64,000 bases of DNA from Octopus bimaculoides (Eukaryota), in assembly GCF_001194135.2 (NCBI RefSeq), contig NC_068987.1:3220166-3284165 (forward strand). Reading direction: 5' to 3'. Of the stretch, positions 4,345 to 58,085 are shown piece by piece. Numbering within the stretch: the first letter of the stretch is position 1; every line of letters starts with the position of its first letter. The notes under the pieces were generated by a model. That model had not been told where the DNA came from. It did no database searches and saw only the letters and a list, made by a program, of their open reading frames with translations. The position numbers and the translations under genes are program-made.

Positions 4345-4677
4345 NNNNNNNNNNNNNNNNNNNNNNNNNNNNNNNNNNNNNNNNNNNNNNNNNNNNNNNN
4401 NNNNNNNNNNNNNNNNNNNNNNNNNNNNNNNNNNNNNNNNNNNNNNNNNNNNNNNNNNNNNNNNNNNNNNNNNNNNNNNNNNNNNNNNNNNNNNNNNNNN
4501 NNNNNNNNNNNNNNNNNNNNNNNNNNNNNNNNNNNNNNNNNNNNNNNNNNNNNNNNNNNNNNNNNNNNNNNNNNNNNNNNNNNNNNNNNNNNNNNNNNNN
4601 NNNNNNNNNNNNNNNNNNNNNNNNNNNNNNNNNNNNNNNNNNNNNNNNNNNNNNNNNNNNNNNNNNNNNNNNNNNNN
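4345..4677. other. Assembly gap (others at 9888-9909 and 46836-46971)
   Basis: Runs of N. Confidence 1.
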
Positions 4678-5879
4678 TTTTTTTTTTTTTTTTTTTTCAT
4701 GTTTGGTATTTATTCTATCGTTTTCTAATGCAGGAAAGCCAACACCGGTTGTTAAACGGAGGAGGGAGAATAAGTGCATACATATAAGACGGGCTTCCAC
4801 ACAGATTCCGTCTACCAAATTCACTCACATAGTAGTGGTCGGTTCAAGATGCCGTACAGTGGGACTGAACCCGAAACCATGTGGTTGCAAAGCGAGCTTC
4901 TTAATCACACAGCCATTCCTGTGATAAATATTTTTTAAAAAATTAAAAACATAAATTACATAAACACGTCTTGACTGTCCGGCTGCACTTCTTGCAACTA
5001 AACATTAAATGAGAGAGAGAGAGAGAGGTGAAGAATGGTCCCGGGACAGAATAAGACAGCCAGCGTTGCAGTTCAGTTCCAGAAAACTAAAAAAAGAACA
5101 AAAAAATGGTCTGGATTACCGAAACGAACACTTGAGAAATAAAAGTATAGCCACATAAAATAGATTGTGTGAGTGAACACCACATTCGTGCATTTGTAAT
5201 ACATTAAATATAATTATCAGTCCTAGATATGAGTTAGATTTAACTTTGATCTGAAAGACTATATAAAGAATAGTTTCGTTAGCTGTGAATTAATTTCCCG
5301 TTTCCAGTCCTAATTTTTTATCGTCCCCGTCTGCCTGGCACACAAATGGCTCAAATAAACATTAACCAAGAAAACCAGTGAGTCTATATTTAACACCGTT
5401 TCTTTCGGTCATTTCAAACATTTCTTGATTTTATTCGACTTTTATTTATTTTTCAGTTTGCTATAATGAAATTAACATTTAATCAATTATCCTTAATTTT
5501 ATATCAAGGTAAATTTTATCGACTTCATCCGTCGATCCGGTTTCTTTTCCACACCTCACCTGGCCCTTGGCATACCTTTAGCGGACACTCGGTGGCAAAC
5601 AATGATATCAAGCCTCCTACCTGGGTACAAACCTTCTCCTGTCAGTCATAGAAACCCCTGAAGGGGTTATTCACGCTACACTTACCCTGACTACGTCGTA
5701 TTTAAAAGTAAACTTGAATACTTTTTAAGATTTCTTGAAGAATCCCTTCGATATGGTTGAAGATATTCCGTTAGATAATATTTCGTTAAACTTTAATGAA
5801 GCTAATGGTTTCAACTTGTTAACCTTTATGGAGCTAATGGTTTCAAGACTTCTAAAATAAACGATACATTATAGCAAAC

Positions 5880-9688: not shown

Positions 9689-12600
9689 TCATCATCGTTT
9701 AACTTCTGCTTTCCATGCTAGCATGGGTTGGATGATTTGACTGAGGACTGGTGAACCAAGTGGCTACACCAGGCTCCAATCTCATTTGGCAGAGTTTCTA
9801 CAGCTGGATGCCCTTCCTAACGCCAACCACTCCGAGAGTGTAGTGGGTGCTTTTACATGCCACCGGCACGAAGGCCAGTCAGGCGGTNNNNNNNNNNNNN
9901 NNNNNNNNNCAGGCGGTACTGGCAACGGCTACGCTCAAAATGGTGTCTTTTACGTGCCACCTGCATGGGAGCCAGTCCAGCGGCACTGGCAACGATCTCG
10001 CTCGAATGTCCTTACACATGCGACCGGCACAGGTGCCATCACGATTTCGCTTTCGCTTGCCTCAACAGGTCTTCGCCAGCCAAGTTTCTGTGTCCAATGA
10101 AGGAGACGTTGGCGTGGGTGCCATCCGTCGAAATTTGTTTGATTTCACTTGCCTCAACAGGTCTTCGCAAGCGGAGTTTAGTGTCCAACGTAGGAAGGTA
10201 TGCATCCTGGCAGAGGTCTTGGATTTAGGTCTCACTTGGCATCATTTAGCATCCATTTTCTATACTGGCATGGATTGGATGGTTTGATAGGAGCTGGAAA
10301 GCCAGAAAGCTGCACCAGGCTCCAGTTGTTTGTTTTGCAATGGGTTCTATGGCTGAATGCCCTTCCAAATGCCAACCACTTGACACAGTATACTGGGTGT
10401 ATTTTACATGGTGCCAGCATGGAATAACAGACATGCATCTTTAGTGAATGAACATTGTACTTGTCTGATTATTCAGCTATTTATGACAAAGTTTACAGTT
10501 TTTGCTGACATCTCCTTTCTCCTTCGTTTCAGGTATCTATATATTTGCTGAAGCACATGCATGTAAAGATGTTCTGAATGCTGCAGAGAAATATATTTAC
10601 AGCCACTTTGCAGAGGTTGAACAGTCTGAAGAATTCTTTGATCTTCCTAAAGAAACTCTAATCCATTTTTTAAGTAGTGAACACTTGCATGTAAGAACAG
10701 AACTGGAAGTGTTTCACCTGGCGCTTAGGTGGCTTCTGCATGACATCACAACTCGGAAAGTATTTATTTGGGATGTCATGTCTCCGGTTCGATTCCCTTT
10801 AATAGCAGAAAACCAACTGCAAGAATATCTTCAAAACTCTTTTGACTTAGGTGATAACGAACACGATATTTCTCTCTCTGTTATTTGCTATAAAATGTAC
10901 AAACACAACAGATTAAAGACGAGTTTAATGAGACCTAGGTTACAAACATGCAAAAATATATATATAATTGCTGGATTTTCTCGACTCCAAGGCAAAAAAT
11001 GGGCCGATGGCGAAACCCTGTCTTGTGTGGAAAAATTTGATACGTTTGAAAAGCAATGGAAAATTATGCCTGACATTGAAGATGCTCGGAGTGGCCATGG
11101 AACTGCTGTGTTTAATAAAAAGGTTTATGTTGCTGGGGGAGAGCATGAGTCATTGATTTGTGACACGGTGGAATGTTTTGATCCGACAACTGGCACATGG
11201 AGTGGAATTGCTTGTATGAATTTTCCTCGTTGTAATCTAGCATTATGTGCGGACAGGAATCATTTATATGCAATCGGAGGCTGGATTGGGAGTGAGTTGG
11301 GGGCCACCATTGAAAGATACGACTCGACACTTGATCAGTGGATAGTGTGTGGTAAAGTAAATACTCTGCGATACGCCATGGGATATGTTGAACATGAAGA
11401 AGGTGAGTGTTCGATATATTATAAGAGGTGAGCAGAAGTTATGATGGCATTAACTTACCATTTTGTCTTTGGTTCCTTCTTTTCATTATATGTAATTGTT
11501 TACATCTGAATCTTCAATTAACAGAGTCATTACTATCAACATATTCTGTGAAATTCTCTCTCTATTACATCCACAGTCTTACCCAGTCTACTTCAGGTCT
11601 CCTCTCTGCCTCTCTTAATACTCAAAACTTATCTAAACTCTTTTACTTCTTAAAATAAATGTTTCTATGCTACAAGGAGACCTTGTTTTTCTTGTTTCCC
11701 TTTGTTCTGAGCATTCTTATAGAGATCCCCCCCCCCTTGTGCTTTCTTTGTTTTGTGTAGCCAAGCACAAATTTTACAGCAACATGACTGAAACAAGTAA
11801 AAGAGTAATAAGTTATGTTTAGAATTTGTACAACGTAGAACTAATTCCATCAAATGAATACGTTTTATTTTATTTTATGGAAACACCATATTTTGTTATT
11901 TTATTTTATTTTAAAATATGATTTTAGGTTTATTCTATTTGATTGGTGGTGCTGATTATTCTGGCATTGAGTTGAAGACTACTGAGTGCTACAACCCTGT
12001 AACCAAAGAATGGACTGTTCTGAGAGATATGCCAACACAGAGAAGCCATGTCGCTGTAACCATCATTGACAACTATATTTATGCTGTTGGTGGCTGTAAT
12101 GAACATGAAGGAGCCCTGGATGTTGTCGAAAAATATTGCATTGACACTGTAAGTATAGAATGATGCATATCTTCATCCAGCCTGTTCCTTATTCATCTCT
12201 GATTCTTTGGTCTGGGATAAAACAGTTTGTTCATTTGTCGACTGTGTTACACTTCTTACTGACTGATTGTAGATCAATCTAAGATTCTGTTTCTATCATA
12301 GAAACGTGGCCCAACAACCACCTACAGTGCTCTCCTACCCATGTTTACATCACAATGCTGCATATTCCATATGGATTTATGTACTTGCTGTATCCATTAA
12401 CATGGGACCAGTGAACAGGATAAATATGGAGGCAGCTGATCCTAACAGACAATGCAAATAAGTGTTTTGTCAACAGAAAAGGGTAGAGAAAATGCGTTGA
12501 TGGTAGAAGCTTTGCTGTTGTGAGCCAGGAGTTTGATGTCAATGAACCTACCATTCATTCTATGTACAAAGTGCTGAGAGATGATTCATTTATCACCCCT

Positions 12601-26337: not shown

Positions 26338-27327
26338 TTATAATTTAAAAAAGGTCTTGTTAACCCAAGTATTAAAGGTTTCGACTAATCCTTCAAAAGT
26401 TGGTCTGTCCTGCGGTTTTCTATCCCAGCACTGCTTGTAGAGAGTCACATATGCCAAATCTTTCGAAGTCTTTAGAGAATCGATTTCCTTTGGACGTAGA
26501 TTGTCAGTCACCACTTTATAGATAATTACGTGCGGATTCTCATACTCAAAAGGCACTTTTCTTGATAACATTTGCCATAATATGATTCCAAAGGAATAAA
26601 CATCACATTTCTTGGTCGGTTGCTTTCCTTTTAAAAGTTCTGGGGCGATGTATGTTGCCGTACCAGACAATGAAGACGTTTCCACAACTGGCCATTTTAC
26701 ACACTGACTGCAACCAAAATCACAAATTTTACAAACATCATTATCTGTGATGATAATATTTGTGGGTTTCAAATCCAAGTGGACAACATGCTTTGAATGG
26801 ATGAATTCCATGGCCTTTGAAACTTGTAAACCATATTTCACACGACGATTATAACAGAGAACTTCTTTAGAGTCATCGATGAGACACCGTAAATTTCTCT
26901 CGCCAACATATTCCATAAGAATCAAGCCATTTTCATGACCAGTCCAAAAAGAATGGACCATTAGAGTCCTTACTATGTTGGGGTGTTCAAAATGAAGTAA
27001 ACGTTGTTCAGCTTTTAAACATTTTATCACCAAATTGTCAGGTTTGCGATGCAAAATTTTTAAGGCAAATTTTTTCGATTTCCAACAAACTAAATAAACG
27101 GTACCAAATCCTCCACTTCCAAGTTTCTTAATTATATGGAGATCTTTTCTAAGTTGCCCGTCAGCATTGTTATTAAATGGAATAATTTTATGACAATTTA
27201 TGTGTCTACATAAAGAATGCGGTGTAATAACATCCTTAGAACATAAATTGTCGGTCATTTGTTTTGTAAAATCAGAGAAGAAAGTCTTTTGGTATTTATC
27301 GTTGTGATGGGCCATGTTGAAAAGCAT
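26338..27327 (-). CDS. MOS: Mos Ser/Thr kinase (oocyte meiotic MAPKKK), intronless, 329 aa
   Basis: LGSGGFGTVY, HPNIVR, HLDLKPTNI, CKICDFGCSQ, SGTATYIAPELLKG, DVYSFGIILWQM and VVTDNLRP. The DFGCSQ motif and the single-exon structure are typical of Mos. Confidence 0.9.
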   Translation of the reverse strand: MLFNMAHHNDKYQKTFFSDFTKQMTDNLCSKDVITPHSLCRHINCHKIIPFNNNADGQLRKDLHIIKKLGSGGFGTVYLVCWKSKKFALKILHRKPDNLVIKCLKAEQRLLHFEHPNIVRTLMVHSFWTGHENGLILMEYVGERNLRCLIDDSKEVLCYNRRVKYGLQVSKAMEFIHSKHVVHLDLKPTNIIITDNDVCKICDFGCSQCVKWPVVETSSLSGTATYIAPELLKGKQPTKKCDVYSFGIILWQMLSRKVPFEYENPHVIIYKVVTDNLRPKEIDSLKTSKDLAYVTLYKQCWDRKPQDRPTFEGLVETFNTWVNKTFFKL

Positions 27328-38300: not shown

Positions 38301-41300
38301 GCCACCGGTTGTATGGAGGACACCTTTTGGTTTTCCAGTAGATCCACTGAATGAGAAAGTGAAAAAAAATAAACAAGTCATATAACACACACACACACAC
38401 ACATAAATATATCATACTTTTACAAAATGAGGGTTGAAAGTGACTCTGAAATTTTGACCTGCTAGCCTTCATCAGATTGCCTGATGAAGGCTAGCAGCCT
38501 GAAATACTTAAGTCATTGTCCCACTTGTCATTATGGTGTGCACAGATATATAGGCAGACAAACACCAGTTGTCAAAAGCAGTGGGGAACAAACACTGATA
38601 TACACATACATACAACAGGCTTCATTCAGTTTCCTCCGCAAGACACCCGATGAAGGCTGGAGAGTATATCAGCCGAAACGTTGTGTTAACAGTAAACAAG
38701 ATGAGGACAAATATCCATCAAATGTAAATAACGTACATAATTCCTCATCTCTTAAATATAGAACTGTATAAAATGTTTTCTCTACCTTGTGTATAACATA
38801 AAAAGAGGATCTTCAGCATCACACCAGACTGGGGGACATTTCTTTGATTCTTCATCAGTTTTGGTTGACAATAAGTCATGCCACCATTTGTCACGACTAC
38901 TGTCCCAATTAATCTATTAAAAACAAAACAAAATTGACATTGCAATGCTTCATTTTTTAGAAACAAATATTGAAGTTTTTTTAAAGAAATATACAAACAT
39001 ACATGATCAAATAAATGTATATACAGAGGATGACCATAAAGTCTGGATACAAAGAAATATTAAAATTTCTTGATTTTTCTTCCACAGTTTGAATATGAGT
39101 TTTTCTAAAGAAAACCCTGTACCCAGACTTTACAATCTCCCTGTGTGCGTATAAATACATCCATAAATAGCTGACAATTGGACCTTGGTGCAGCTTTCCA
39201 GCTGGCTAGCTCCTGTCAAACCATCCAACCCATGCCAGCATGGAAAACAGACATTAAATGATGATGTTGATGATGATTTTGAAGTTTATCTCAACATTTT
39301 CTATAGAATCCGGAACCAGCATTGAAAGCTCATTTTTTTGAGCAAAAGACAAAGAAACCAACGTTAACTTACTTTCAGATCATAACACGGCCGTTTCGCA
39401 GGAATTTGCTGAGTGCAACTGCTTCCGTTCCTCAACTCATTCGGATTAGGACTCAGGTGACGCACAACGATGCAATGATCAATATTGTAGCCACTATAAC
39501 AACAAAAACAATCATAGTAAAATGGTGGTGCTTCACAAAAGTATTTTGCAAACAAAATTATACTGGAGACATTTAGAAAACCTGCTGACCAAGGTCTAGA
39601 CAACAACAATAGACTCACCATTATCAGAATGAAACGTTGCTAAGCATTTTAACCACCAGGCTAATGATTCTACTAGTTTGATGCCTGTGGACAAGATATC
39701 TCAAGAACTACTGGATGGATTCGGTTGAAACTTTCAGGGATGTTTGGCCTCGTGACTGGCACAAACTGATTAGATTTGGGATTGATCTGGTACCAGACAA
39801 GGATTCTGGATTATATTTCCTCTTTTTCCACTTAATTTTTGAGAGCAGTCGGGTTCATTTTTAGTATTTTCCTCTGTGAGAGCAGTCGAGTTTATTTCAG
39901 ATATTCTCATTTTAAAAATTATCTCTGGCTAATCGTTGACAGGACATTGGTGTTGCCTTGGTGGAGGTTTGCACTCTGTGAGTGCTCTTGTTATTATTAT
40001 TATTATTAACGACTATGCTATATCATTCTTTTATTTCTTTTACTCATTCGACTGTGGACATACTGGAGCACTACCTGCATGGATTTTGTCAATAAAAATT
40101 GATCTCAGAACTTATTTTTGGAGTCTGCTACTTATTCCGTCAGTGTTAAGTTGTAAGGTTGCAAACAAAGGTGGTTCTCAGTGGTATTTGAACTCAGAAC
40201 GAAGAGAGGATCCACAATGATTACCACAAAACAATTTATCTGGTGCTCAAACAACTTTGCCAACTGGCTGCCTACACACCCACACACACACACACACAAG
40301 ATATTTATGAACCTTACTTTTCCTTGCAACGTTTGATGGCCTCATCAGCAATATTCTTCAAGTTTATTAATTTCGTTCCTCTCCACATACCATCTGAAAG
40401 CAAACATCTGAGATACTTAAAAACTATTTCACATCATGTCTGTTATATTTTAATAACAATTTACCAAGTTTCAAACAAACCACAATAGAACACATAAATT
40501 AATAATGAATATTTCATAATAGTTCTTGTTGGGGCTGAGCACCAATCCTTGGTGAACCCCTACTTGTACTCTGAATTCTTCGCTGTACTCATTGCCAACC
40601 CCCACCTTACTGGTAGCATCCTTGTACAGCTCTCATCAACCACTAATTTATCCTTAGTTTCCGTATTTACCACCAGATAAAGGATCAGGGGACCCTATCA
40701 AAGGCTTTCTCCAAGTCAACAAAAGCCAAGTACAGAGGTTTATCTTTGGTTATGTATCTCTCCTGCAGCTGCCTTACCAGAAATATAGCATCAGTGGTGC
40801 TTCTCCCAGGCACAAAACCAAATTGCATCTCATCTAAGCTAATTCTCTCCCTAATTAGTTGGGCTTTAACTCTCTCCTCAGCTTTCATCACCTGATCCAG
40901 CAATTGAATATTTTAATGTTAATAATGGTAAACAATGGCAAGAAGAATGTCAGTGGCTTTATATTGCTGAATATGATTATTTAATGGTCTAATAATAACG
41001 TGCGTGGCACAGTGTTTTCTGGACAAATGGCTGGTGTTGAGGATTGTATTTATTAATGAGAAGGTAAACTTGCGGAATAACAGATGTCAAAATCTTAGTA
41101 TACAAGAATAAGAGATAAAAGTACTTCTGAAAGAATAACAGTACTTCATCTTCATCTACTTGTAGGCTGGAAAGAATGGAAATAGAAATGATTTGATGGA
41201 TGAACAGAGTATTGTTGAGAGAGAGAGACAAAGAAGACACTGAATTGTAAAAAATGAAAGGATACAACAAGCAATGGAAACTGTGAAAAGAAATGGGATA

Positions 41301-47300: not shown

Positions 47301-50300
47301 GGTTGTCCTTGCATACAGGTGTGTCCCCTGCATCTCTCTTCAGCTAAACAATCCTGGCTCGTAGGTGCTGTGTTAAAGCACTCAGTAAACTCTATAAGGT
47401 GGTGGCTATTAGGAAGGGCATCCATGCCAAAACAGACATGGGGCCTGGGCAGCTCTTCAGCTGGCCAGCTCCTGTCAAACTGTCCAACCCATGCCAACAA
47501 GGAAAACCGGCATTAAATGATGATGATGATGACATACATACATTTGTATACACACAAATGCATATATGCACACACAGACACACAAATACATATATTTATA
47601 CAAATATAAATATAAGAATATTTCTAGTAATAAAACGGTTTCAAGATTAAGAGAAAACATGCAAGTTTTATTAAGCGAAGGAATCATGGAGTCCCATATA
47701 GCTTCAGTGCAGTTAAAAACCACTTTTAACCCAGCAAGGGAACCTGAACATAACCATTCAACCTGCAGCAAATAGCAGCTAAATCCCCCTCAAATCACAC
47801 CTCAATGTCTTAAGAAAACAAAACAAAAAGCAACAAGTTGGTCAATATGGTCCTAGATAGATTAAAAACGTTGAGATTGGAGGATTATGGCAAGAGTGTT
47901 TCTAATTAGGATGCTCGTTAAGAATTAAATAACAACAGTTATCGCTCATACTGCTTCAGACCATTTCTGTATTGGTTAATATTCAGAAGAAAACTTCTGG
48001 TGGTGTAAGTTTGGCAATTAATATAGAATTAATTTATAAACTTATGTTACTTAATAGATACATACACATGTGTATAGATACGCATTAGATAATAATAAAT
48101 GCACCCTTCTAAAGCCTAGCCAGACTCATGGGCCCGGTTTCCCGGTTTCAATGGCATATGTGTTCCCCCCAGCTGGACGGGACACCAGTCCATCGCAGCG
48201 TTACTCATTTTTGCCAGCTGAGTGGACTGGAGCAATGTGAAATGAAGTGTTTTGCTCAAGAACACAACGCGTAGCCCGGTCCAGGAATCGAAACCACAAT
48301 CTTACGATCATGATGCCGACACCCTAACCACTAAGCCACGCGCCTCCACATAGATACGCATTAACACACGCATATACATACATGCATGCATGCATACATA
48401 AGAAACTAAAATGACAAAGGAATGAATAATTATGCCATGCATTCTATTAGCTTACAGCTGTTTCTGCTATAAGATTTCCTTGTCCTTTTAATTTCTTTTT
48501 ACTGCTCTGTACTCGACTGGTGTTTCGTTCTGGAGCATATGTAATATTGAGTTCTAACACCAGGTTATTAGTATTGCTATGCATAAGCAAAATGATATAT
48601 CTATATGTAAATATATATGAGGATATTATTGTTTATAATAATACCAGTGGCTTAGCATGTGAAGAAAAACCCATAATGGTAAAAAATTTATCAATTAGTA
48701 ATTAAGGGTACTAACAAGCATTTTGACTGCTATATTTAGCATGCTGGTAGCACTGCTTGTTACTTCCTTTGATTACTAATTGATACAGATATATGTGTGT
48801 GTGTGTATATATATGTGTGAATATGAACGTGTTTTCTATGTATGCACATACACACACTCAAACACACGTATGTATTTATGAAACACACATATACACACAC
48901 ACATGCAGGCATTGAGGATCCATAAGTGTATACCCATATATGTATACACTTACACGTGTGTTTGTAAATACTTTCTGTGGCTATTGTACACTGTTCTAAA
49001 TGATATTAGTTTTTAAAAAATCATTTCTGTTAAGAATTTGACATTGAAAATTTTAAAACAAAAATATCGGATGAGTTGTGCAGATTTTGTTGGTTCTGAT
49101 TTAGTGTAAAGAGAGCACCAAGCAGTTAGTGTAAAGACGCAAAGCAATGAAGAGCACTCTAAGAATCACCTGCAGTTACAATTGCACAGCACTTGGTATC
49201 AAGGATTCTATTTGTTAATGCCTCAGCGGAAAATCCAGCAAACTACAAGAAAATGGTTGCAAAATAAAAACAATGTTTAACTAAAATCTTCATTAATTTA
49301 TACCCAAGTTATTATGGCATGAAAAAAATCACATGACACAAAATGCTAAAAATTCATAATGTTAGCAATTTTTCCAATATATTTCAAACAATCTGATTGG
49401 AACTTTCAAAGGTAAAATATGAATAACCATTCCTTTAAAATGATTTGTTATATTTCTTTCCGACATAAATTATTAAGCTAAGTTTTGATACGTGCCAATG
49501 CATGAAACTCTCAGCCCTTGAGTCACTCTGTGACTTTTGCTGATTATTAATAATAGACATATATATATATATATATACACGCGATTTCAGTTCTATTTCC
49601 CTGTTTACTTCACCAGACCTAAGGCAAAAATGATTAATATATAATGTAGATTTGTATATTTTCTACTCTAGGCACAAGGCCCGAAATTTTGGGGGTGGGA
49701 ACCAGTCGATTAGATCGATCTCAGTACGCAATTGGTACTTAGTTTACTGACCCCGAAAGGATGAAAGGCAAAGTTGACCTTGGCGGAATTTGAACTCAGA
49801 ACGTAAAGACAGACGAAATACCGCTAAGCATTTTGCCCGGCCTGCTAACGTTTCTGCCAGCTCACTGCCTTAATGTAGATTTTTATAAACAATGTGATGA
49901 AAGAATGTCCTAGAGACAAACAAGTGAATCTGATATGTTGATTTTATAGCAACTCCAAACAAAAAACAGTCAGGTTTCAAAGAATAAGAATTGGTCAAGA
50001 AATGCAGGAATGGTAACTGTACTGATGTGAGCATGCATTACAGATAAATAACATAGGAAGAAATGCCAGAGATGGTGTCAAACAAACATAGCTCAAAGGT
50101 AAGGTAAAGAAGATTTCACGCAGGTAATTCTTCACAGTGGAAATAAAAATATAACTTTTTTTAATTAGCAGCAAAATAGAGCCTGATGAAGGTTAAACCT
50201 CCTCTTCAGGATCTGAAAGTGTCTCAGTCATCATCATTTGCTCAGTCCCTGCTGCTCCATTAGGGTCCCATAATACTCAATATCTGTAGCAACACTGCAC

Positions 50301-51169
50301 ACACCCCACCCCATCATACCCCAAAATATCATCCAGCTGACTGGTCAAGACTCACCGATACACAGCAACCCCTGGATCCTAGAACCAATGTTTCCTCTCT
50401 GTGTCTATTCTAATGATTGTTCAAACATGTCCTAAGGCAACCTAAAGCCCACGTCACTTCCCCTCTCACAGCCCTACTGGATTTCAAACCCACAAATTTA
50501 GCCCTTGTTTCTTCCCCACACGTACTAATGAATTCATTTGAAACTGAACTGAACTGATTAGTCTTCGAGGGTAGTACTTACCTCTTTAATTAAATACATA
50601 AAAACTGAATATAATATAACATAATGTAATGTAATGCAATATAACAAGGACATGTTGGTGTGAGGATACAAACAAACTAATAAGACAACAATGTGTTTTT
50701 CGAGTGGACAAAATTATTGTCACAAAATGTTCCCAGAAAACTGAAGAAATGGTAAAAGATTAATTGTGCTACAAGTGAAAAAATAAGCAATAGAAACAAT
50801 ATTGAAAATACACAAACATAAAAATAATTATGTGTATACATATATATATATATATACATACATATATATATGTATATATGTGTGCATGTGTGTGTATACA
50901 CATATACATATATGGCTGTGTGTGTGTGTATATACATATATATACATTTATATATATGTATATACATATATATATATATGTATATATACATGTATATATA
51001 TATATATATGCATACATATATGTATATATACATGTATATATATATATGTATGTATATGTACCATAATAAACACGTTTATTATAGTAGTTTGACCTTAGAG
51101 TCCCTCTTAGCGTGAGGCATTCTTGTATAGTAATGCCCTTATATAAATAAATATATACATATATCTATA

Positions 51170-51216
<47 letters not shown>

Positions 51217-51377
51217 ACCATAGTTAGCACATAAATGTGAAACAAAGTGGAAAAAAATAGTACTCAAACACCGGAGGTAGAATAATATGCTTTGTTAATA
51301 AAGCTGCAAAGACATCACAAAAAAACTGTTACTCAGAGTGTATATATATGTGTGTGCGTGTGTGTGTGTGTGTGTGT

Positions 51378-51434
<57 letters not shown>

Positions 51435-53895
51435 CACACACACACACCCATAATTCATAAAATAAATGATATTCATGGTTCAAATGGCAGATAAAATGAG
51501 AACGAGACTTTCCAAGCAAAACATGGCTGTGAATAGAAGAAATCAGTTAGAAAATAGATCAAAAATTTACTGCCACACAAAAACAGTATGTATAACACAT
51601 ACATAGAGTGTGCACACACACAAGATCTCAAACAATTTAAACTAATCTTTCCACAGTGAAACAGCAAAAATAAGTTTTGATCTCAAGCTAGCAAAGGTGA
51701 CCTGAATGTTGCAGATTATATTTTGGGGGGAAATCGAGTAATTAATCATCCAAAACTTAATGAGGATAATTAATCTTTCTCCAATGAAAAGCCCTCACAC
51801 CTAATTAATTAATTCTAATGAATGCCTGTCATACTTAACTAATTTATTCAATGCAGGTTCAATCCTTGCCTTAGAAAGCACCATTATGTGTTGTGTACAA
51901 ACAAAATAGCCCCGATTTACTTTGCAATAAACAAGTACCACACTAACATGGTTTAGATGGTTTACTTTTAAAATGCAGGGCCAATTTAAAACCCAATTCA
52001 TAGTAGAAAAGCAATGATAGGGGAAATCCCTATTTCATGAGATTTCTCACTTTTATAATGGTAGGAAAGCAGTAAACTCCACCACTTCACCATTTCTGTA
52101 AGATATTGGTCACGTCCATTTTTTCCTGCTAGAATGGGTTGTATGGAATTTATTGAGGCAGATTTTCTATGGCCAGAGGTCTGTCCTGTAGCCAACCCTC
52201 ATTTGTTTTCAAGTCAGGTAATTATTCCCTATGACCCAACATATTTTCTTGGAATATTGGGAATGAAGAACACCACTTGCATGCAGGTGACAATCTGCTG
52301 AGCAAAATCTTGCTATATACAAGTCCTACAAATAACCCTTCTCTATGTTTTACTGAAGCAAGTTACAGACCAAATCAAAAGAAATAAATGAAAATAAAAA
52401 TGAAATTATTAACATTTCAAGCAAATCTAATGAAACCTTCTTTCAACATTAGACTGGTTTCAGAAGACAGATGTTTCATTTCGAAATGCAAAATTCACTG
52501 TATTAATAACAGAAGAAAATATTTGAATTCAAAACAGTCAAACATAGACAATAAATACATTGTTATATTTGAAATAACAAAGAGAAACAGAAAAATAAAT
52601 TGTTAAATAACATTTAACAACAATTAATCTCACTCAAATGATTAGATTTATTTGTTTATATATATATAAATAATTTCTAAACGTTGATTCCAAAAAATGT
52701 TTTAGGCAACACCTTAGTAATAGGAATATAAAGTTTTGATGAAGATTATGAACAGCAGTTAAAAGATTCATAAACAACATTGACAGATGACAGATTACCA
52801 TTACAAAACAGTATAAACACTGCACTAATAAATACAAGATATAAATTGTTTGCATTTACAGGTAAGCTACAAATAAGCTACAACATGCATACAATATGCA
52901 AAGTATTTTTTTTTTTTGAAGACAAATTTTCATTAAAGTATAACCACTAATTCTAACAACAACACTATAAAAAAGAATAAAAGTTTATAAACAGTGTGTG
53001 TATAAATTTGCATTCATAGAAATAAAATGGCTTGTCTAATAGAAACTCATGAATTGTAAAAGAGAAACGAACGTTATTGTCCTTTACATTCACTTATTCC
53101 CAGCAGCTTTTTGCTATTGACGCCACCAAAATGAGCAAAGGCACAAAACTGTTCTGGTTTTTGAGCAATAACTGACCAGAGAAGAGCGTGTCAATGTGTT
53201 CATCATCATCATCGTTTAACGTCCACTTTCCATGCTAGCATGGGTTGGACGATTTGACTGAGGACTGGTGCAACCGGATGGCTACACCAGGCTCCAATCT
53301 AATTGTTGTCTGTGAATTTTCCATGTGTTCCTTCGTTGTCCTTCTGTGTGATTTCTTAATCATATCATAAATATAGATGAAACCCCACCCTCCGAGCTTG
53401 AAGCTGTGCAAGCCACATGGCAACCTCAATGGTACAAGTGGTATGAAAAAATCACTTGGTCACGCCTGAAAGTGGTTGGTATTAGGAAGGGAATCCAGCC
53501 ATAAAAACCATGCCAAAACAGACAGTTGGAGCTAAATGCATTTCATGAACACATCCAACCCTTGTCAAATCGCCCAACCCATGCCAGCATGGAACACGGA
53601 CATTAAATGATGATGATAATGATAATATATATATATATACATAGGCTCTGTCAGCCACACAAAGTTGCACATACGATATCACTGCATAGCAGCATAGACA
53701 AATGCTTTCAACCATAGATGTTGATGCTCATCTTCTAAATATTATGTGTGTGCATGAATGTGTCCATGTCTGTGTAGAATAAAGAATAAATAATTTCTAA
53801 AAGAGTTCACTGAAGTTTGCACCACTTGTAAGTGAAATTTGAGAGAGGGAGAGGAGCTATCTAGAAACTCATCAATTGTGTGTGTGTGTGTGTGT

Positions 53896-53931
<36 letters not shown>

Positions 53932-56900
53932 TAAATTTGCAGGTGACTCGGCAGAATCAGCAGGATGTTGAATAGAATATTTCTTATGGCATTTGGTTAC
54001 ATCTTTTTTATATTCTCAGTTCAAAAACCTGTGCTCAAGTCAACGCTGCCATTCTTCTTTAAAAGACTTATCAACTAAGTCTCAGATAAGGTAATAATCT
54101 TTTCTACTCTAGGCCCCAAATTTTGGGGGAGGGGGCCAGTCGATTAGATCAACCCCAGTACGCAACTGGTACTTAATTTACTGACTCTGAAAGGATGAAA
54201 GGCAAAGTTGACTTCGGTGGAATTTGAACTCAGAACGTAAAGACAGACAAAATACCATTAAGCATTTTGCTAATGATTCTGCCAGCTCCCTGCTTTTCAG
54301 ATAAAAGTAATCATGTGAGGAAAGGGTCAATATAGCTGAGAAAAGACCCCAGAAGGTGGCGTCTCAGCATGGCTGCAGTTAAATAACCAAAAGACAGTAA
54401 AAACAAAATATTTGCTTTCATTTTGAAAATAAAATAAAATATCAACATTTAGCCATTATTTTTAAGTTTAAGAAATAAGAATTACACGTTAAAAATTACA
54501 AATAAAAATGTCATTCCTGAAGCAGTGAGAGAGTTTGAAATATAAAAACATAAACTAGCTTTATAGAAAATGAAAGAAAGCAACACGTTCTGTTTGAAAC
54601 AGTTTTGCCACAGTGAAGTAAATAATGAAATCACAACCAAACAAAACCAACATTTAAAACTAATTACTTAAACTGAACCAATTATATAGAAAAATACAAC
54701 AACGAACAAGTAATTAACAATTACAGGGAGAGGGTAAATGCAACAGCTAGGCAGGTATATCAAATATATATAAACTGTAAGATGTTATACAGATTTGATA
54801 TAAGTGTTATGATGTGGGCTTTAAGTGCTGACCTGCAGTAATAATTAGAGAGGCTTCACATCCCATCAATCGTTCAGAAAGGGCTCTTTCTGAATAGCCA
54901 GCAAACTGCAAAAACGGCAACAAAATTTTGAGATGGATCAAAGTTTGAGAGAATAATAAGTTTGAAAGTAAAGAAAATAGAAAACAACAAATATGACAAT
55001 AGAAATGACAGCAATTGTGTTGGAGTTTGTTACAATAAATGAGAAATGAACCTCCAAAACCAACCTACAAGGCATGCTAAAATTATTTTTGACACCAACC
55101 CACATATGACCACCCCTGCTTCTATGATACAAACTGTCTTAAAGTGATATAAATTAAAATCCATCTAACCATATTCACCACCCATTTTTCCTGGAAGGAG
55201 CATCAAGGTAGCATCCTTGGGCACCTACTCCATAGGGTCCTGTTATTAAATCTTCCAACTGGATTCCCAAAAGTGACCAACTGCAACTATGGACCTTAAC
55301 CAACCATCTTGCTCTTGGGGTCTTGCTGGTTGGTTCAGCTTGAAGAATCCTTCTTGTGATCCTTTCCTGCAACATTCTAACCACAGATCCACAGCAGTGG
55401 GCCTTTTTCCAGCTCTTTATGATCTGAGTTCAAATTCTGCCAAGGCTGAATGTGTCTTTCATGCTTTCAGAGGTTGATAAAATAAAAACCAGTTGAACAT
55501 TGGGTGGGGGTCAATGCATTTGCTTTAAAATTGTTGGTCTTCTTATATTGAAAGATGTTACAGTAATACCTCACTTCACAAGGACCCGCTTTACAAGACC
55601 CCAAATTTACGAGTTTTATTTTACATCATCATCATCATCATTGTTTAATGTCAATTTTCCATGCTGGCATGTGTTGGATGGTTTGACTGAGGACTGGTGA
55701 GCCTGGAGGCCGCACCAGGCTCCAATCTGATCCGGCAATGTTTCTACAGCTGGATGCCTTTCCTAATGCCAACCACTTTGCTTTTTGCTTGTTGGCAAGT
55801 TACAGTTTCGGAGGATCATGATACAAAGCTCCCTCATCAGGCTTCTGTCATCTAAGCCTGACAAGATAGGTACATATGATGAGCCTTTAAAACTTAAAGT
55901 TGCATGGATCCAAATCAAACTGTTATTAAATAATAATATATGAAACTCCAACCAAATATGCTGAGTACCTCTTTCTTTCATTTGTCCACTACACACACAC
56001 ACACACTAAAACAAAAGATTGACAAGCAGTTACACATGGCATCAAAATCATTTGTCACGATGACACACAAACATAAACAATAATTAAGAAAAATGAAAAA
56101 AGATAGTCCTTGATCACTTTAAATTACTATTTCCCTGTGTTTCAATGTAACTTTGATGTCTTAGCCATTTTGGAGTCACTTTTTAGGCATAAATGAAATC
56201 ATCCAAGCGTAGTTTGATCTACAACATATCTTTTATTCCAAAGAAATGCCAAGCTCCCTGAGTCTTATGTTTCCAATCTACAGCCTCTCTTTATATATTT
56301 CTAAACTCTATTTTCCCTTTATTGTCTTCTCACTTTGTATTCATTTGACTTGCTTTTCACATTCTTCTCATGACTTACTGATCTGTATGCTTGGATGCCT
56401 CCAAAGTATTCAGGCTGCTAAAAACTAGAGCTGACATTTGCATGTCAAGGGACATACAATTGACTTCTTCCCCAATCGTTTTCTTCGTAACTGCTCTAGT
56501 ATGACCTTTCGTCTCCCCTCTATAATCTTCTAGCTTCATATATGACATCTCCGGTCTAGTTTGCTTATTATCATCTAAACGTTCTTTTGTCAATTCTAAT
56601 TTTTTTTTCCTTTCCTTTCTTCTCTCTCTCTATCTACCTACCCCCTACACTCTCCCTCACTTTTACTCAGATGATTTTATTTCTTACTTCTATGCTTTCA
56701 TATCACCACTGTATTACCTTTTTCTGTTTCCAATTGATGTTAGGAGGCACAAGCGCTTACACAAACATGGTCTCACATGGCAGTAACTTCTGTCCACCAA
56801 ATTCAATTACAAAGCTTCGGTCAGCCCGAGGCTATAACAAAAGACAATTGCTCAAGTTGCCACGCAGTGGGACTGATGTCTACTTATATATTGTATGTAC

Positions 56901-58085
56901 CACTACTACATTTTTTTTTGTATAACTTCTCTCTGATGAAAATGCTCAGTAATGTCACGCTTACAGCTTCAATTGATTTACATGGATTGTTACTAATAAA
57001 TCTTTACCTTTTCACTGTTTCCTGCAGCATTAGAAAAGCATCCAGCCATAGAAATCATGCCAAAAAAAGACACTGGAGCACAATGCAGACCTTGGACACA
57101 TTGAATCCTGTCAAAACATCCAGCCGATGCCAGCTTGGACCATGGATGTTAAATGAGGATGGTTTGTTTATATCCTCAAAATTTAGTGGTTCAGCAAAAC
57201 CAGACCAATAGAATAAATACCAGACTTCATAGAAGTCCATTTGTTTGACTAAACCCTTCATGGTGGTGTCCCAGCATGGTTGCAGTACAATGATTAAAAC
57301 ACGTAAAAGATAAAAGATATATATATATAAATATATATAGTCATTACTAAAGTGACGGAGGGTGTTAGTGAGCACCAGCATTGCTAGAAATAAGGGTCAA
57401 GACAAATCTTAGACACATGAGAGCACGTGCTCTGACATGGCTAAGAGTTGTTTGACTCTTATTTCTAGCAATACTGGTGCTCACTAGCACCCTCCATCAC
57501 TGTAGTGACGACTGTACTTGTTGCCTTTCGGTTGTAAATTGTGAACAGCCACCTGAATAAATTTGTATATATTTGTATATATGAAAGGGAAGAGGAAGAT
57601 TAGAATGGACAATGATAAAATTTCTCACCACAATTGAATGAATAACTCCGAGCCGAGCGCAAGCTAACATTGCAACGACCAGTTCAAGAATCATCGGCAT
57701 ATATAAAGACACCCTGTCACCTTTCTGGACCCCTGCAATCAAATAAAACAAAAACATTAATTCCCTGTCTTACAGAGACCGGGTTTCATTAGTTCATTTC
57801 ATGCAAACAAGATCTTCTTTACAAGTAGGATTTCATGGAAGAAAACGTAACCAAGTCCATGGAGCATAATGCCACATGCCAACTTTGAAATGAAAGATTA
57901 AAATCAAACAATCCTTCATAAGTATACAGACATGTAGATCATATATTCACAGAAATCATTACAAAAAAACAAAACAAAAAAAGAAATCAACTGAATGGAT
58001 GCAAGTTGCAGGATGCCTAATCTGGGTGGGGGCAACTGACCAACACCATTTAATGATTGCCTGATTTGTTACCAAAGGTGTGTGA

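What the first reader, a model, noticed from the sequence alone, without database searches (positions are those of the whole stretch)
49170..54905. Tandemly duplicated, probably mutually exclusive exon pair in acetyl-CoA synthetase (ACSS2)
Seen: two 73-nt exons lie between the constitutive exons 57629-57732 and 40318-40393. Both are AG/GT-bounded, phase 0 to 1 and stop-free: A = [24 protein letters not shown] (54833-54905) and B = [24 protein letters not shown] (49170-49242). Ten of 24 residues are identical, 5 of those 10 use different synonymous codons, and many other changes are conservative. That pattern points to an old duplication with selection on both copies. Including both (146 nt) or neither shifts the frame, so only one at a time gives an enzyme. 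Established (from recall): the FGG/FAG-F-S segment lies at the CoA/pantetheine-binding surface in bacterial Acs structures. Inference: splicing switches two ACSS2 isoenzymes that differ in charge (ER/SE vs AE/TN; G vs D) and in F vs Y near the CoA site, perhaps by tissue, temperature or nutrient state. Neither exon appears in the ORF track, so one copy is easily missed. I do not know whether this pair has been reported.
Basis: partly seen in the sequence, partly recalled or inferred. Interest (0 to 1): 0.85.

Follow-up and report, generated by a model that had tools for sequence, protein, structure and literature searches.

The report
Mutually exclusive exon pair, octopus ACSS2
The octopus acetyl-CoA synthetase gene carries two alternative copies of one 73-base exon, only one of which is used per mRNA; public gene models already list both forms, but the switch turns out to be shared across molluscs, so probably over 500 million years old, and nobody seems to have studied it.

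Summary
On the minus strand, exon A (54905-54833) and exon B (49242-49170) are both 73 nt, AG/GT-bounded, phase 0 to 1 and stop-free. They share 10 of 24 residues. Using both or neither shifts the frame into an early stop.

The window matches Octopus bimaculoides ACSS2-like at 100% in the exon cores. RefSeq already models both forms: XP_014773580.1 carries A and XP_014773581.1 carries B, both 685 aa. So the pair is not unannotated. I found no paper describing it.

New here:
- The same arrangement, divergent A upstream of canonical B, occurs in O. sinensis, Argonauta, abalone, a vent snail, a clam and a chiton. An unannotated pair is present in the annelid Capitella.
- Isoform pairs differing only in this segment are also modelled in O. 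vulgaris, Patella and Mya.
- A brachiopod, a bryozoan, a millipede and a hemichordate have one copy.
- Cuttlefish mRNA-length contigs carry either A or B.
- Both exons are under purifying selection.

The segment is a strand-helix-strand unit. It starts at the CoA-adenine contact Phe163 and ends 5 residues before the CoA-phosphate contact Arg191. Exclusivity is best explained by the frame rule plus nonsense-mediated mRNA decay (NMD). The functional difference between isoforms is unknown.

The parts
57629..57732 (-). Upstream constitutive exon, 104 nt. Encodes ...[34 protein letters not shown], with donor GTGAGA.
   Evidence: The tblastn match to P0090/P0210 residues 132-170 starts here and runs 12 nt past the donor into the intron. 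The exon part equals their residues 133-166.
54833..54905 (-). Alternative exon A, 73 nt. Encodes [24 protein letters not shown]. This is the divergent copy and lies 5' in the transcript. Acceptor ...tttttgcag, donor gtcagc.
   Evidence: (100% to XP_014773580.1 residues 167-190). Orthologues in O. sinensis, O. vulgaris, Argonauta and cuttlefish mRNA.
49170..49242 (-). Alternative exon B, 73 nt. Encodes [24 protein letters not shown]. This is the canonical, ancestral-like copy and lies 3' in the transcript. Acceptor ...tcttgtag, donor gtgatt.
   Evidence: the only copy hit by E. coli Acs; 100% to XP_014773581.1 residues 167-190.
49108..49169 (-). Conserved intronic block of about 62 nt immediately downstream of exon B. 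It carries four UGCU motifs and ACACUAAC...ACACUAAA. It is a candidate splicing-regulatory element; that role is inferred.
   Evidence: the blastn block running from 26 nt upstream of exon B, through the exon, to 62 nt downstream is 84.6% identical between Octopus and Argonauta. The rest of the three introns is unalignable. Alignment, motif counts.
40318..40393 (-). Downstream constitutive exon, 76 nt. Encodes (D)[24 protein letters not shown](N) and contains the equivalent of the CoA-phosphate-binding Arg191.
   Evidence: Arg191 role from PMC10455477.
32396..59991 (-). The part of the ACSS2-like gene inside the window, covering residues 102-685 of the 685-aa protein. The first coding exon (residues 1-101) lies beyond the window end.
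   Evidence: tblastn of E. coli Acs and of P0090/P0210. Pfam ACAS_N, AMP-binding and AMP-binding_C on P0090.

Best explanation
This is a genuine pair of mutually exclusive exons made by an ancient tandem duplication of a 73-nt exon. The gene is the Octopus bimaculoides acetyl-CoA synthetase gene (ACSS2-like, 'cytoplasmic').

Each mRNA takes exon A or exon B, giving two 685-aa enzymes that differ at 14 of 24 residues (167-190). The swapped piece is the end of a beta strand, a loop, one helix and the next strand. It begins with the Phe that stacks on the CoA adenine and ends 5 residues before the Arg that binds the CoA phosphates.

The residues invariant across all variants (F1, G3, S5, R12, and nearly L9) are kept in both copies. 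B keeps the ancestral animal pattern (E7, D15, K17, C18, T23). A has lost several of these.

Exclusivity is most simply enforced by the reading frame. 73 is not a multiple of 3, so A+B or neither gives an early stop and, by inference, nonsense-mediated mRNA decay (NMD). The choice between A and B is presumably made by trans-acting splicing factors. The only conserved intronic block, downstream of exon B, is the candidate site.

Shown: the anatomy, the homology, the use of each exon in modelled or assembled mRNAs, the conservation and the purifying selection. Inferred: NMD, the regulation, and any kinetic or regulatory difference between the two isozymes.
For: - Anatomy and frame logic.
- Chance control.
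- Identity of the locus: exon cores 100% identical to O. bimaculoides XP_014773580.1 (A) and XP_014773581.1 (B).
- Equal-length isoform pairs differing only in this segment: O. sinensis, O. vulgaris, Patella vulgata, Haliotis rubra, H. rufescens, Ruditapes philippinarum and Gigantopelta aegis, and Mya arenaria.
- Genomic loci with two 73-nt AG/GT exons, divergent copy always 5': O. sinensis, Argonauta, Haliotis, Ruditapes, Gigantopelta, the chiton Liolophura and Capitella.
- One copy only: Lingula, Watersipora, Chamberlinius and Ptychodera.
- Transcript evidence: cuttlefish Logan contigs of about 3.2 kb encode full-length protein with A-type FAGYSEKALYERLTGCQASIIITA (P0366, 11 contigs) or with B-type (P0093 and others).
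- Selection, Octopus versus Argonauta: exon A dN/dS about 0.22 and exon B about 0.39, with the surrounding introns unalignable.
- Fold: AlphaFold models of both isoforms give the same strand-helix-strand with similar confidence. The A-isoform model matches solved Acs structures.
- CoA contacts: PMC6122825 and PMC10455477.
Against: - No RNA-seq junction reads of O. bimaculoides itself were examined. For this species the evidence for use of A is the RefSeq model plus orthologues.
- NMD of A+B or skip-both transcripts is inferred, not shown.
- No functional difference between the isoforms is known.
- The A copies of different classes are no more similar to each other than to B copies. A single origin therefore rests on the conserved order and a few shared derived states (Gly15, Ala18, Leu13).
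- Oysters, mussels, scallops and heterobranch snails show only B-type proteins in the database. I could not check whether A is lost or just unannotated there.
Confidence: 0.93

Rival explanations
1. Exon A is an unused, decaying duplicate (a pseudo-exon), and only B makes enzyme.
For: A is the more divergent copy. E. coli Acs finds B but not A by tblastn. A has lost the otherwise near-universal Asp15 and Cys18.
Against: - A keeps an open frame, AG/GT and exactly 73 nt in every octopod, gastropod, bivalve and chiton locus examined.
- A differs by only 2 of 24 residues between Octopus and Argonauta, against 7 of 24 for B.
- Full-length cuttlefish mRNA contigs contain it.
- RefSeq models it in several species.
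Confidence: 0.02
2. A and B belong to different paralogous genes, or the duplication is an assembly artefact.
For: Nothing specific. It is a generic concern in a gapped draft assembly; N runs exist elsewhere in the window.
Against: - Only one set of flanking ACSS2 exons exists in the window.
- The same A-then-B arrangement between the same flanking exons is found in independent assemblies of O. sinensis and Argonauta, and A then B in the same order in five more distant species.
- A and B are only 53% identical at the nucleotide level, which is not what an assembly duplicate looks like.
Confidence: 0.01
3. The exons are mutually exclusive, but the choice is enforced by competing RNA secondary structures (docking site and selector, as in insect Dscam1 or 14-3-3 zeta) rather than by frame plus NMD alone.
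For: This is a common mechanism in arthropod exon clusters. A conserved intronic block exists downstream of B.
Against: - Duplex predictions among the exon-proximal intron flanks are not better than shuffles in Argonauta.
- The one outlier in Octopus (z = -3.5) pairs a stretch of the first intron that is not conserved in Argonauta with an AT-rich stretch downstream of exon A.
- Apart from the exon-adjacent blocks, nothing in the three introns is conserved between Octopus and Argonauta.
- Only 80 nt per flank were tested.
Confidence: 0.07
4. The pairs in cephalopods, gastropods, bivalves, chitons and Capitella arose by independent duplications of the same exon rather than once.
For: A copies of different lineages share on average 8-10.5 of 24 residues with each other, about the same as with B copies. 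Lingula and Watersipora, also lophotrochozoans, have one copy.
Against: - The divergent copy is 5' of the canonical copy in all eight loci.
- Derived states are shared among A copies of different classes: Gly15 in octopus, cuttlefish, clam and chiton; Ala18 in cephalopods, three gastropod lineages and the chiton; Leu13 in the Octopus, Patella, Haliotis, Ruditapes and Mya A copies.
- Within each species A and B are already highly diverged (7-14 of 24 identical).
Confidence: 0.25

Closest known systems
RefSeq gene models XP_014773580.1 / XP_014773581.1 (O. bimaculoides acetyl-coenzyme A synthetase, cytoplasmic, isoforms X2 / X1) and their counterparts in O. sinensis and O. vulgaris
   Same: They are exactly this exon pair. 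The window's exon A and exon B are 100% identical to residues 167-190 of the two models.
   Different: They are automated models without description. Nothing is recorded about mutual exclusivity, age, distribution or function.
Tandem exon duplication-derived substitutions (mutually exclusive homologous exons) as catalogued for human genes (PMC8373072)
   Same: Adjacent homologous exons of equal length and phase, one used per transcript, very old and under purifying selection. That catalogue traces 21 events to Bilateria and notes equivalents in octopus (ATE1) and oyster (OGDH).
   Different: ACSS2 is not mentioned in that paper's main text ('acss' 0 occurrences). The single-copy state in a hemichordate and a millipede suggests this event is restricted to molluscs and possibly annelids rather than bilaterian-wide.
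Pyruvate kinase PKM exon 9/10 switch (recalled from general knowledge, not tested here)
   Same: A central metabolic enzyme whose two isozymes differ only by one of two equal-length, homologous, mutually exclusive exons.
   Different: PKM is vertebrate, and its exons encode a known allosteric and subunit-interface region with known regulators. Here neither the regulators nor the functional consequence are known.
Bacterial and fungal AMP-forming acetyl-CoA synthetases with solved structures (S. enterica Acs 1PG4/2P2F, Cryptococcus, Leishmania)
   Same: Same fold and domain set. The A-isoform model matches them with TM 0.75-0.81 at about 50% identity. The Phe163 and Arg191 equivalents are conserved.
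   Different: These are single-sequence enzymes, with no alternative version of the 163-186 segment.

Membership tests
Mutually exclusive exon pair derived from tandem exon duplication | Two neighbouring internal exons of the same length and the same splice phases | tested here: met
   Both are 73 nt, phase 0 to 1 and AG/GT-bounded, and they lie between the same constitutive exons.
Mutually exclusive exon pair derived from tandem exon duplication | Sequence homology between the two exons beyond chance | tested here: met
   10 of 24 aa and 39 of 73 nt are identical. Profile scores are 47 and 55 bits, against 5 bits or less elsewhere in the window. The next best AG-73-GT open window shares 4 of 24 residues.
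Mutually exclusive exon pair derived from tandem exon duplication | Mature mRNAs contain exactly one of the two | tested here: met
   Equal-length isoform models differ only in this segment in three Octopus species and six other molluscs. Cuttlefish mRNA-length contigs carry A or B. Raw junction reads of O. bimaculoides were not available.
Mutually exclusive exon pair derived from tandem exon duplication | Inclusion of both or neither is non-productive | tested here: met
   A+B and skip-both both shift the frame into stops within 12 codons. Degradation by NMD is inferred.
Mutually exclusive exon pair derived from tandem exon duplication | Both copies conserved in related species | tested here: met
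   Both are intact in O. sinensis, Argonauta, Haliotis, Gigantopelta, Ruditapes and Liolophura. dN/dS is 0.22 for A and 0.39 for B.
AMP-forming acetyl-CoA synthetase (ACSS2-like, ANL superfamily) | Domain set ACAS_N + AMP-binding + AMP-binding_C and similarity to solved Acs enzymes | tested here: met
   Pfam scores are 66.9, 294.7 and 79.8 bits. The PDB Acs hits reach E about 1e-225 to 1e-231. The AlphaFold model matches 1PG4/2P2F with TM 0.75-0.81.
AMP-forming acetyl-CoA synthetase (ACSS2-like, ANL superfamily) | Acetate:CoA ligase activity of each isoform | not testable with these tools
   This needs recombinant enzyme assays.
RNA-structure-controlled exon clusters (docking site and selector) | Conserved complementary intronic elements pairing one docking site with a selector per variant | tested here: inconclusive
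   No duplex beat shuffles in both Octopus and Argonauta within 80 nt of the exons. The only conserved intronic sequence is exon-adjacent. Deep-intron elements in a denser species set were not tested.
Spliceosome-incompatibility MXEs (U2 versus U12 introns) | A U12-type 5' splice site (RTATCCTT) on one of the competing introns | tested here: not met
   The donors are GTGAGA, GTCAGC and GTGATT, and all acceptors are polypyrimidine-AG.
Steric-hindrance MXEs | An intron between the two exons too short to splice (well under 100 nt; threshold recalled from general knowledge) | tested here: not met
   The intron between A and B is 5590 nt here and 787-11581 nt in the other species.

The most novel reading that the evidence does not exclude
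The A/B switch arose once, before the split of molluscan classes and possibly before the mollusc-annelid split (Cambrian or earlier). It has since been kept as a two-isozyme system for acetyl-CoA synthesis. In this reading the A isoform is a specialised enzyme with altered CoA handling, regulation or stability, deployed by tissue or physiological state. It would be a lophotrochozoan, splicing-based counterpart to the gene-duplication route (ACSS1/ACSS2) taken by vertebrates.
Probability: 0.35. Interest if true: 0.55.

Novelty: new member of a known kind. Interest (0 to 1): 0.4.

Why it matters
Acetyl-CoA synthetase feeds acetate into lipid synthesis, energy metabolism and protein and histone acetylation. 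A splice switch kept for hundreds of millions of years across mollusc classes argues that the two enzyme forms do different jobs. It replaces the structural unit between two CoA-contacting residues.

It offers a natural, minimal 24-residue swap for studying how that region tunes an ANL-family enzyme. It also adds a clear lophotrochozoan case to the short list of very old mutually exclusive exons in metabolic enzymes.

It is not a new kind of mechanism, and the two transcripts are already in RefSeq. The value lies in the comparative picture and in a testable biochemical question, not in the discovery of the exons.

Tried and rejected
1. A short 83-aa query with exon A returned only fragment proteins and no cephalopod A-type fragment. 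It did not help with expression.
2. E. coli Acs tblastn mapped the gene and hit B but not A. It was useful only as a map.
3. A profile search for a third copy or relics in the window and in the other loci found exactly two copies per mollusc locus. The chiton additionally has a tandem array of partial copies of exon A's 5' end just upstream of exon A.
4. The Patella vulgata locus could not be fetched, so Patella evidence is protein-only.
5. The docking/selector test by duplex prediction among exon-proximal intron flanks gave no signal reproducible in Argonauta. The single Octopus outlier is not in sequence conserved in Argonauta. The first attempt timed out.
6. The orthology test of A copies by pairwise identity was uninformative, with A-A about equal to A-B. 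Only individual shared derived states support a common origin.
7. Literature searches for ACSS2 or acetyl-CoA synthetase with 'mutually exclusive', octopus or mollusc found nothing relevant.
8. The motif scan for Rbfox, MBNL, PTB, CELF and STAR sites around the exons found nothing shared beyond octopods.
Full report
**Observation**

- Exon A (54905..54833) and exon B (49242..49170) are each 73 nt. Each is preceded by a polypyrimidine tract plus AG and followed by GT.
- They lie between the exon ending ...GVIHSIV (57732..57629) and the exon starting (D)GMWRGTK (40393..40318).
- Either exon joins the flanks in frame. Both together, or neither, run into a stop within 12 codons.
- The peptides share 10 of 24 residues, and five of those ten use different codons.

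As a chance control, the 17-kb interval holds 63 AG-73nt-GT windows, 24 of them open in frame. Apart from A and B, the best shares only 4 of 24 residues with B. A profile of mollusc variants, which includes the window's own A and B, scores A at 47 bits and B at 55 bits. Nothing else in the window exceeds about 5 bits.

**What the locus is**

E. coli Acs mapped a multi-exon acetyl-CoA synthetase gene on the minus strand from about 59991 to about 32400.

A protein search with the concatenated exons found O. bimaculoides 'acetyl-coenzyme A synthetase, cytoplasmic' as the best hit. The exon cores in the window are 100% identical to it, so the window is O. bimaculoides or something indistinguishable from it. 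Residues 1-101 are encoded beyond the window end.

The cluster look-up shows that RefSeq already holds two 685-aa isoforms. XP_014773580.1 carries exactly exon A and XP_014773581.1 carries exactly exon B. O. sinensis has the same RefSeq pair, and the O. vulgaris genome annotation has one too. The exon pair is therefore not overlooked in public annotation.

**Distribution**

Equal-length isoform pairs that differ only in these 24 residues are also modelled in these species:
- Patella vulgata, Haliotis rubra, H. rufescens, Gigantopelta aegis and Ruditapes philippinarum
- Mya arenaria

I fetched genomic loci and scanned them with the exon profile. Two 73-nt AG/GT exons were found in each of the following, always with the divergent copy 5' of the canonical one:
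- O. sinensis and Argonauta hians (its B copy is unannotated but intact)
- Haliotis, Ruditapes and Gigantopelta
- the chiton Liolophura
- the annelid Capitella teleta (its A-like copy FAGFSMCSLADRMIAGNMQMLIIG is unannotated)

Only one copy, with the same 73-nt exon boundaries, is present in the brachiopod Lingula. The same holds for the bryozoan Watersipora, the millipede Chamberlinius and the hemichordate Ptychodera.

So the 73-nt exon is old in bilaterians. The duplication is at least as old as the chiton-conchiferan split, that is, the crown of Mollusca. It may be shared with annelids.

The A copies evolve fast and are not measurably closer to each other than to B copies. A single origin is nevertheless supported by two things:
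- the constant order, A then B
- derived states shared by A copies: Gly15 in octopus, cuttlefish, clam and chiton; Ala18 in cephalopods, three gastropod lineages and the chiton

I put independent origins at about 25%.

**Use and selection**

A cuttlefish cluster (Acanthosepion pharaonis and relatives) contains Logan contigs of about 3.0-3.3 kb that encode uninterrupted 696-697-aa proteins. For a gene with more than 15 introns these must be spliced mRNAs.
- One form (P0366, seen on 11 contigs) has FAGYSEKALYERLTGCQASIIITA. This is clearly the orthologue of octopus A, with 17 of 24 residues identical.
- The others have the B type.

An unidentified Logan mRNA-length contig, bivalve-like by its exon sequence, also carries an A-like exon (P0104).

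Between Octopus and Argonauta, exon A differs at 2 of 24 residues (dN/dS about 0.22) and exon B at 7 of 24 (about 0.39). Apart from short exon-adjacent blocks, the three introns are unalignable. Both copies are therefore under purifying selection. In octopods A is the better conserved of the two.

**How exclusivity probably works**
- The intron between A and B is 5590 nt, and 787-11581 nt in other species. That excludes steric hindrance.
- All splice sites are ordinary GT-AG, which excludes U2/U12 incompatibility.
- Duplex predictions among exon-proximal intron flanks gave nothing reproducible between Octopus and Argonauta. There is thus no evidence for a docking/selector mechanism, although only 80 nt per flank were tested.

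The simplest mechanism is the frame rule. The exon length is 73 nt, so double inclusion or double skipping creates premature stops, and such mRNAs would be removed by NMD. This last step is inferred.

For the choice itself, the best lead is the largest intronic block conserved between Octopus and Argonauta. It is about 62 nt, lies directly downstream of exon B (49169..49108), and carries four UGCU motifs and ACACUAAC/ACACUAAA. These motifs resemble MBNL- and STAR/Quaking-type sites. That resemblance comes from recall and is not tested.

**What changes in the protein**

In E. coli and S. enterica numbering the exon is residues 163-186.
- Phe163, the first residue, lies 3.3 Å from the CoA adenine in S. 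enterica Acs (PMC6122825).
- Arg191, five residues past the exon end, binds the CoA 5'-diphosphate and 3'-phosphate (PMC10455477).
- Both are identical in the two isoforms.

AlphaFold models of both isoforms were built from the same 44 sequences. They give the same strand (162-167/168), helix (172-181/182) and strand (186-190). Block pLDDT values are 75/80/89 for A and 76/84/90 for B. The A-isoform model matches solved Acs structures at TM 0.75-0.81.

F1, G3, S5 and R12 are invariant in all variants and outgroups. B keeps the ancestral E7, D15, K17, C18 and T23, while A has replaced them.

The acyl-pocket residues, recalled from the bacterial structures, lie elsewhere in the protein. A change in CoA handling, regulation, stability or partner binding is therefore more plausible than a change of acyl substrate. 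None of this is tested.

**Comparison with what is known, and novelty**

This is a textbook tandem-exon-duplication MXE. The class is known to be old and functionally important; see PMC8373072, which traces 21 human events to Bilateria and does not mention ACSS2 in its main text.

The two transcripts are already in RefSeq. Full-text searches found no paper that describes or discusses the event.

I rate it a new, undescribed member of a known kind, of moderate interest. The additions here are its phylogenetic depth, the transcript evidence, the selection on both copies and the structural placement.

**Limits**
- No junction-level RNA-seq was available for O. bimaculoides.
- The Capitella A-like exon has no transcript support.

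Noticed in passing
L008 12240-13034 (chiton Liolophura sinensis ACSS2 locus): An 87-nt unit is tandemly repeated about 9 times immediately upstream of, and running into, exon A. The unit holds exon A's branch-point-like CTGACTAAC, polypyrimidine tract, AG and first ~33 nt. This gives a row of partial exon copies (FGGYSQSSLAD...). It is either a real minisatellite of 3' splice sites or an assembly artefact.
   Followed up: partly
L010 4664-4736 (Capitella teleta ACSS2 locus): An unannotated second 73-nt AG/GT exon (FAGFSMCSLADRMIAGNMQMLIIG) lies 926 nt upstream of the annotated one. It suggests the same mutually exclusive pair in an annelid. There is no transcript evidence.
   Followed up: partly
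window 49108-49169 (-): A block of about 62 nt just downstream of exon B is conserved between Octopus and Argonauta: the blastn block spanning exon B and its flanks is 84.6% identical. It contains four UGCU motifs and ACACUAAC...ACACUAAA. It is a possible splicing enhancer or silencer.
   Followed up: partly
window 10502-11431 (+): A 309-aa open frame with BACK and Kelch domains (Pfam 97.7 and 100.3 bits). It is probably an exon of a KLHL-type gene on the opposite strand from ACSS2.
   Followed up: partly
window 26338-27327 (-): An uninterrupted 329-aa ORF with a complete protein kinase domain (Pkinase 170 bits). It looks like an intronless kinase gene just downstream of ACSS2.
   Followed up: partly
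window ~4350-4750 and ~9880-9905: Runs of N (assembly gaps) show up as X stretches in ORF translations.
   Followed up: no
window 50835-51434: Long (TA)n microsatellites lie inside the intron between exon A and exon B.
   Followed up: no
P0092 (Pinctada imbricata, 807 aa) and P0094 (Timema cristinae, 733 aa): These ACSS2 protein models contain internally repeated segments. Pinctada has three copies of ...YDTSSLKVLGTVGEPIN...WQTET joined by odd linkers, and Timema has two copies of STFPFFGV...YCTGDG. They could be mis-modelled tandem exon duplications or assembly duplications at other exons of the same gene.
   Followed up: no
P0117 (Strigamia maritima) and P0134/P0375 (unidentified transcripts, 73% identical to Capitella): The only listed centipede protein has an A-like segment (FGGFSADSLTERLIAAQCKIIVTA, no Asp15). 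The unidentified transcripts carry FGGYSMDALAARILDSKASALIIA. These hint that divergent versions of this exon may exist outside molluscs.
   Followed up: no
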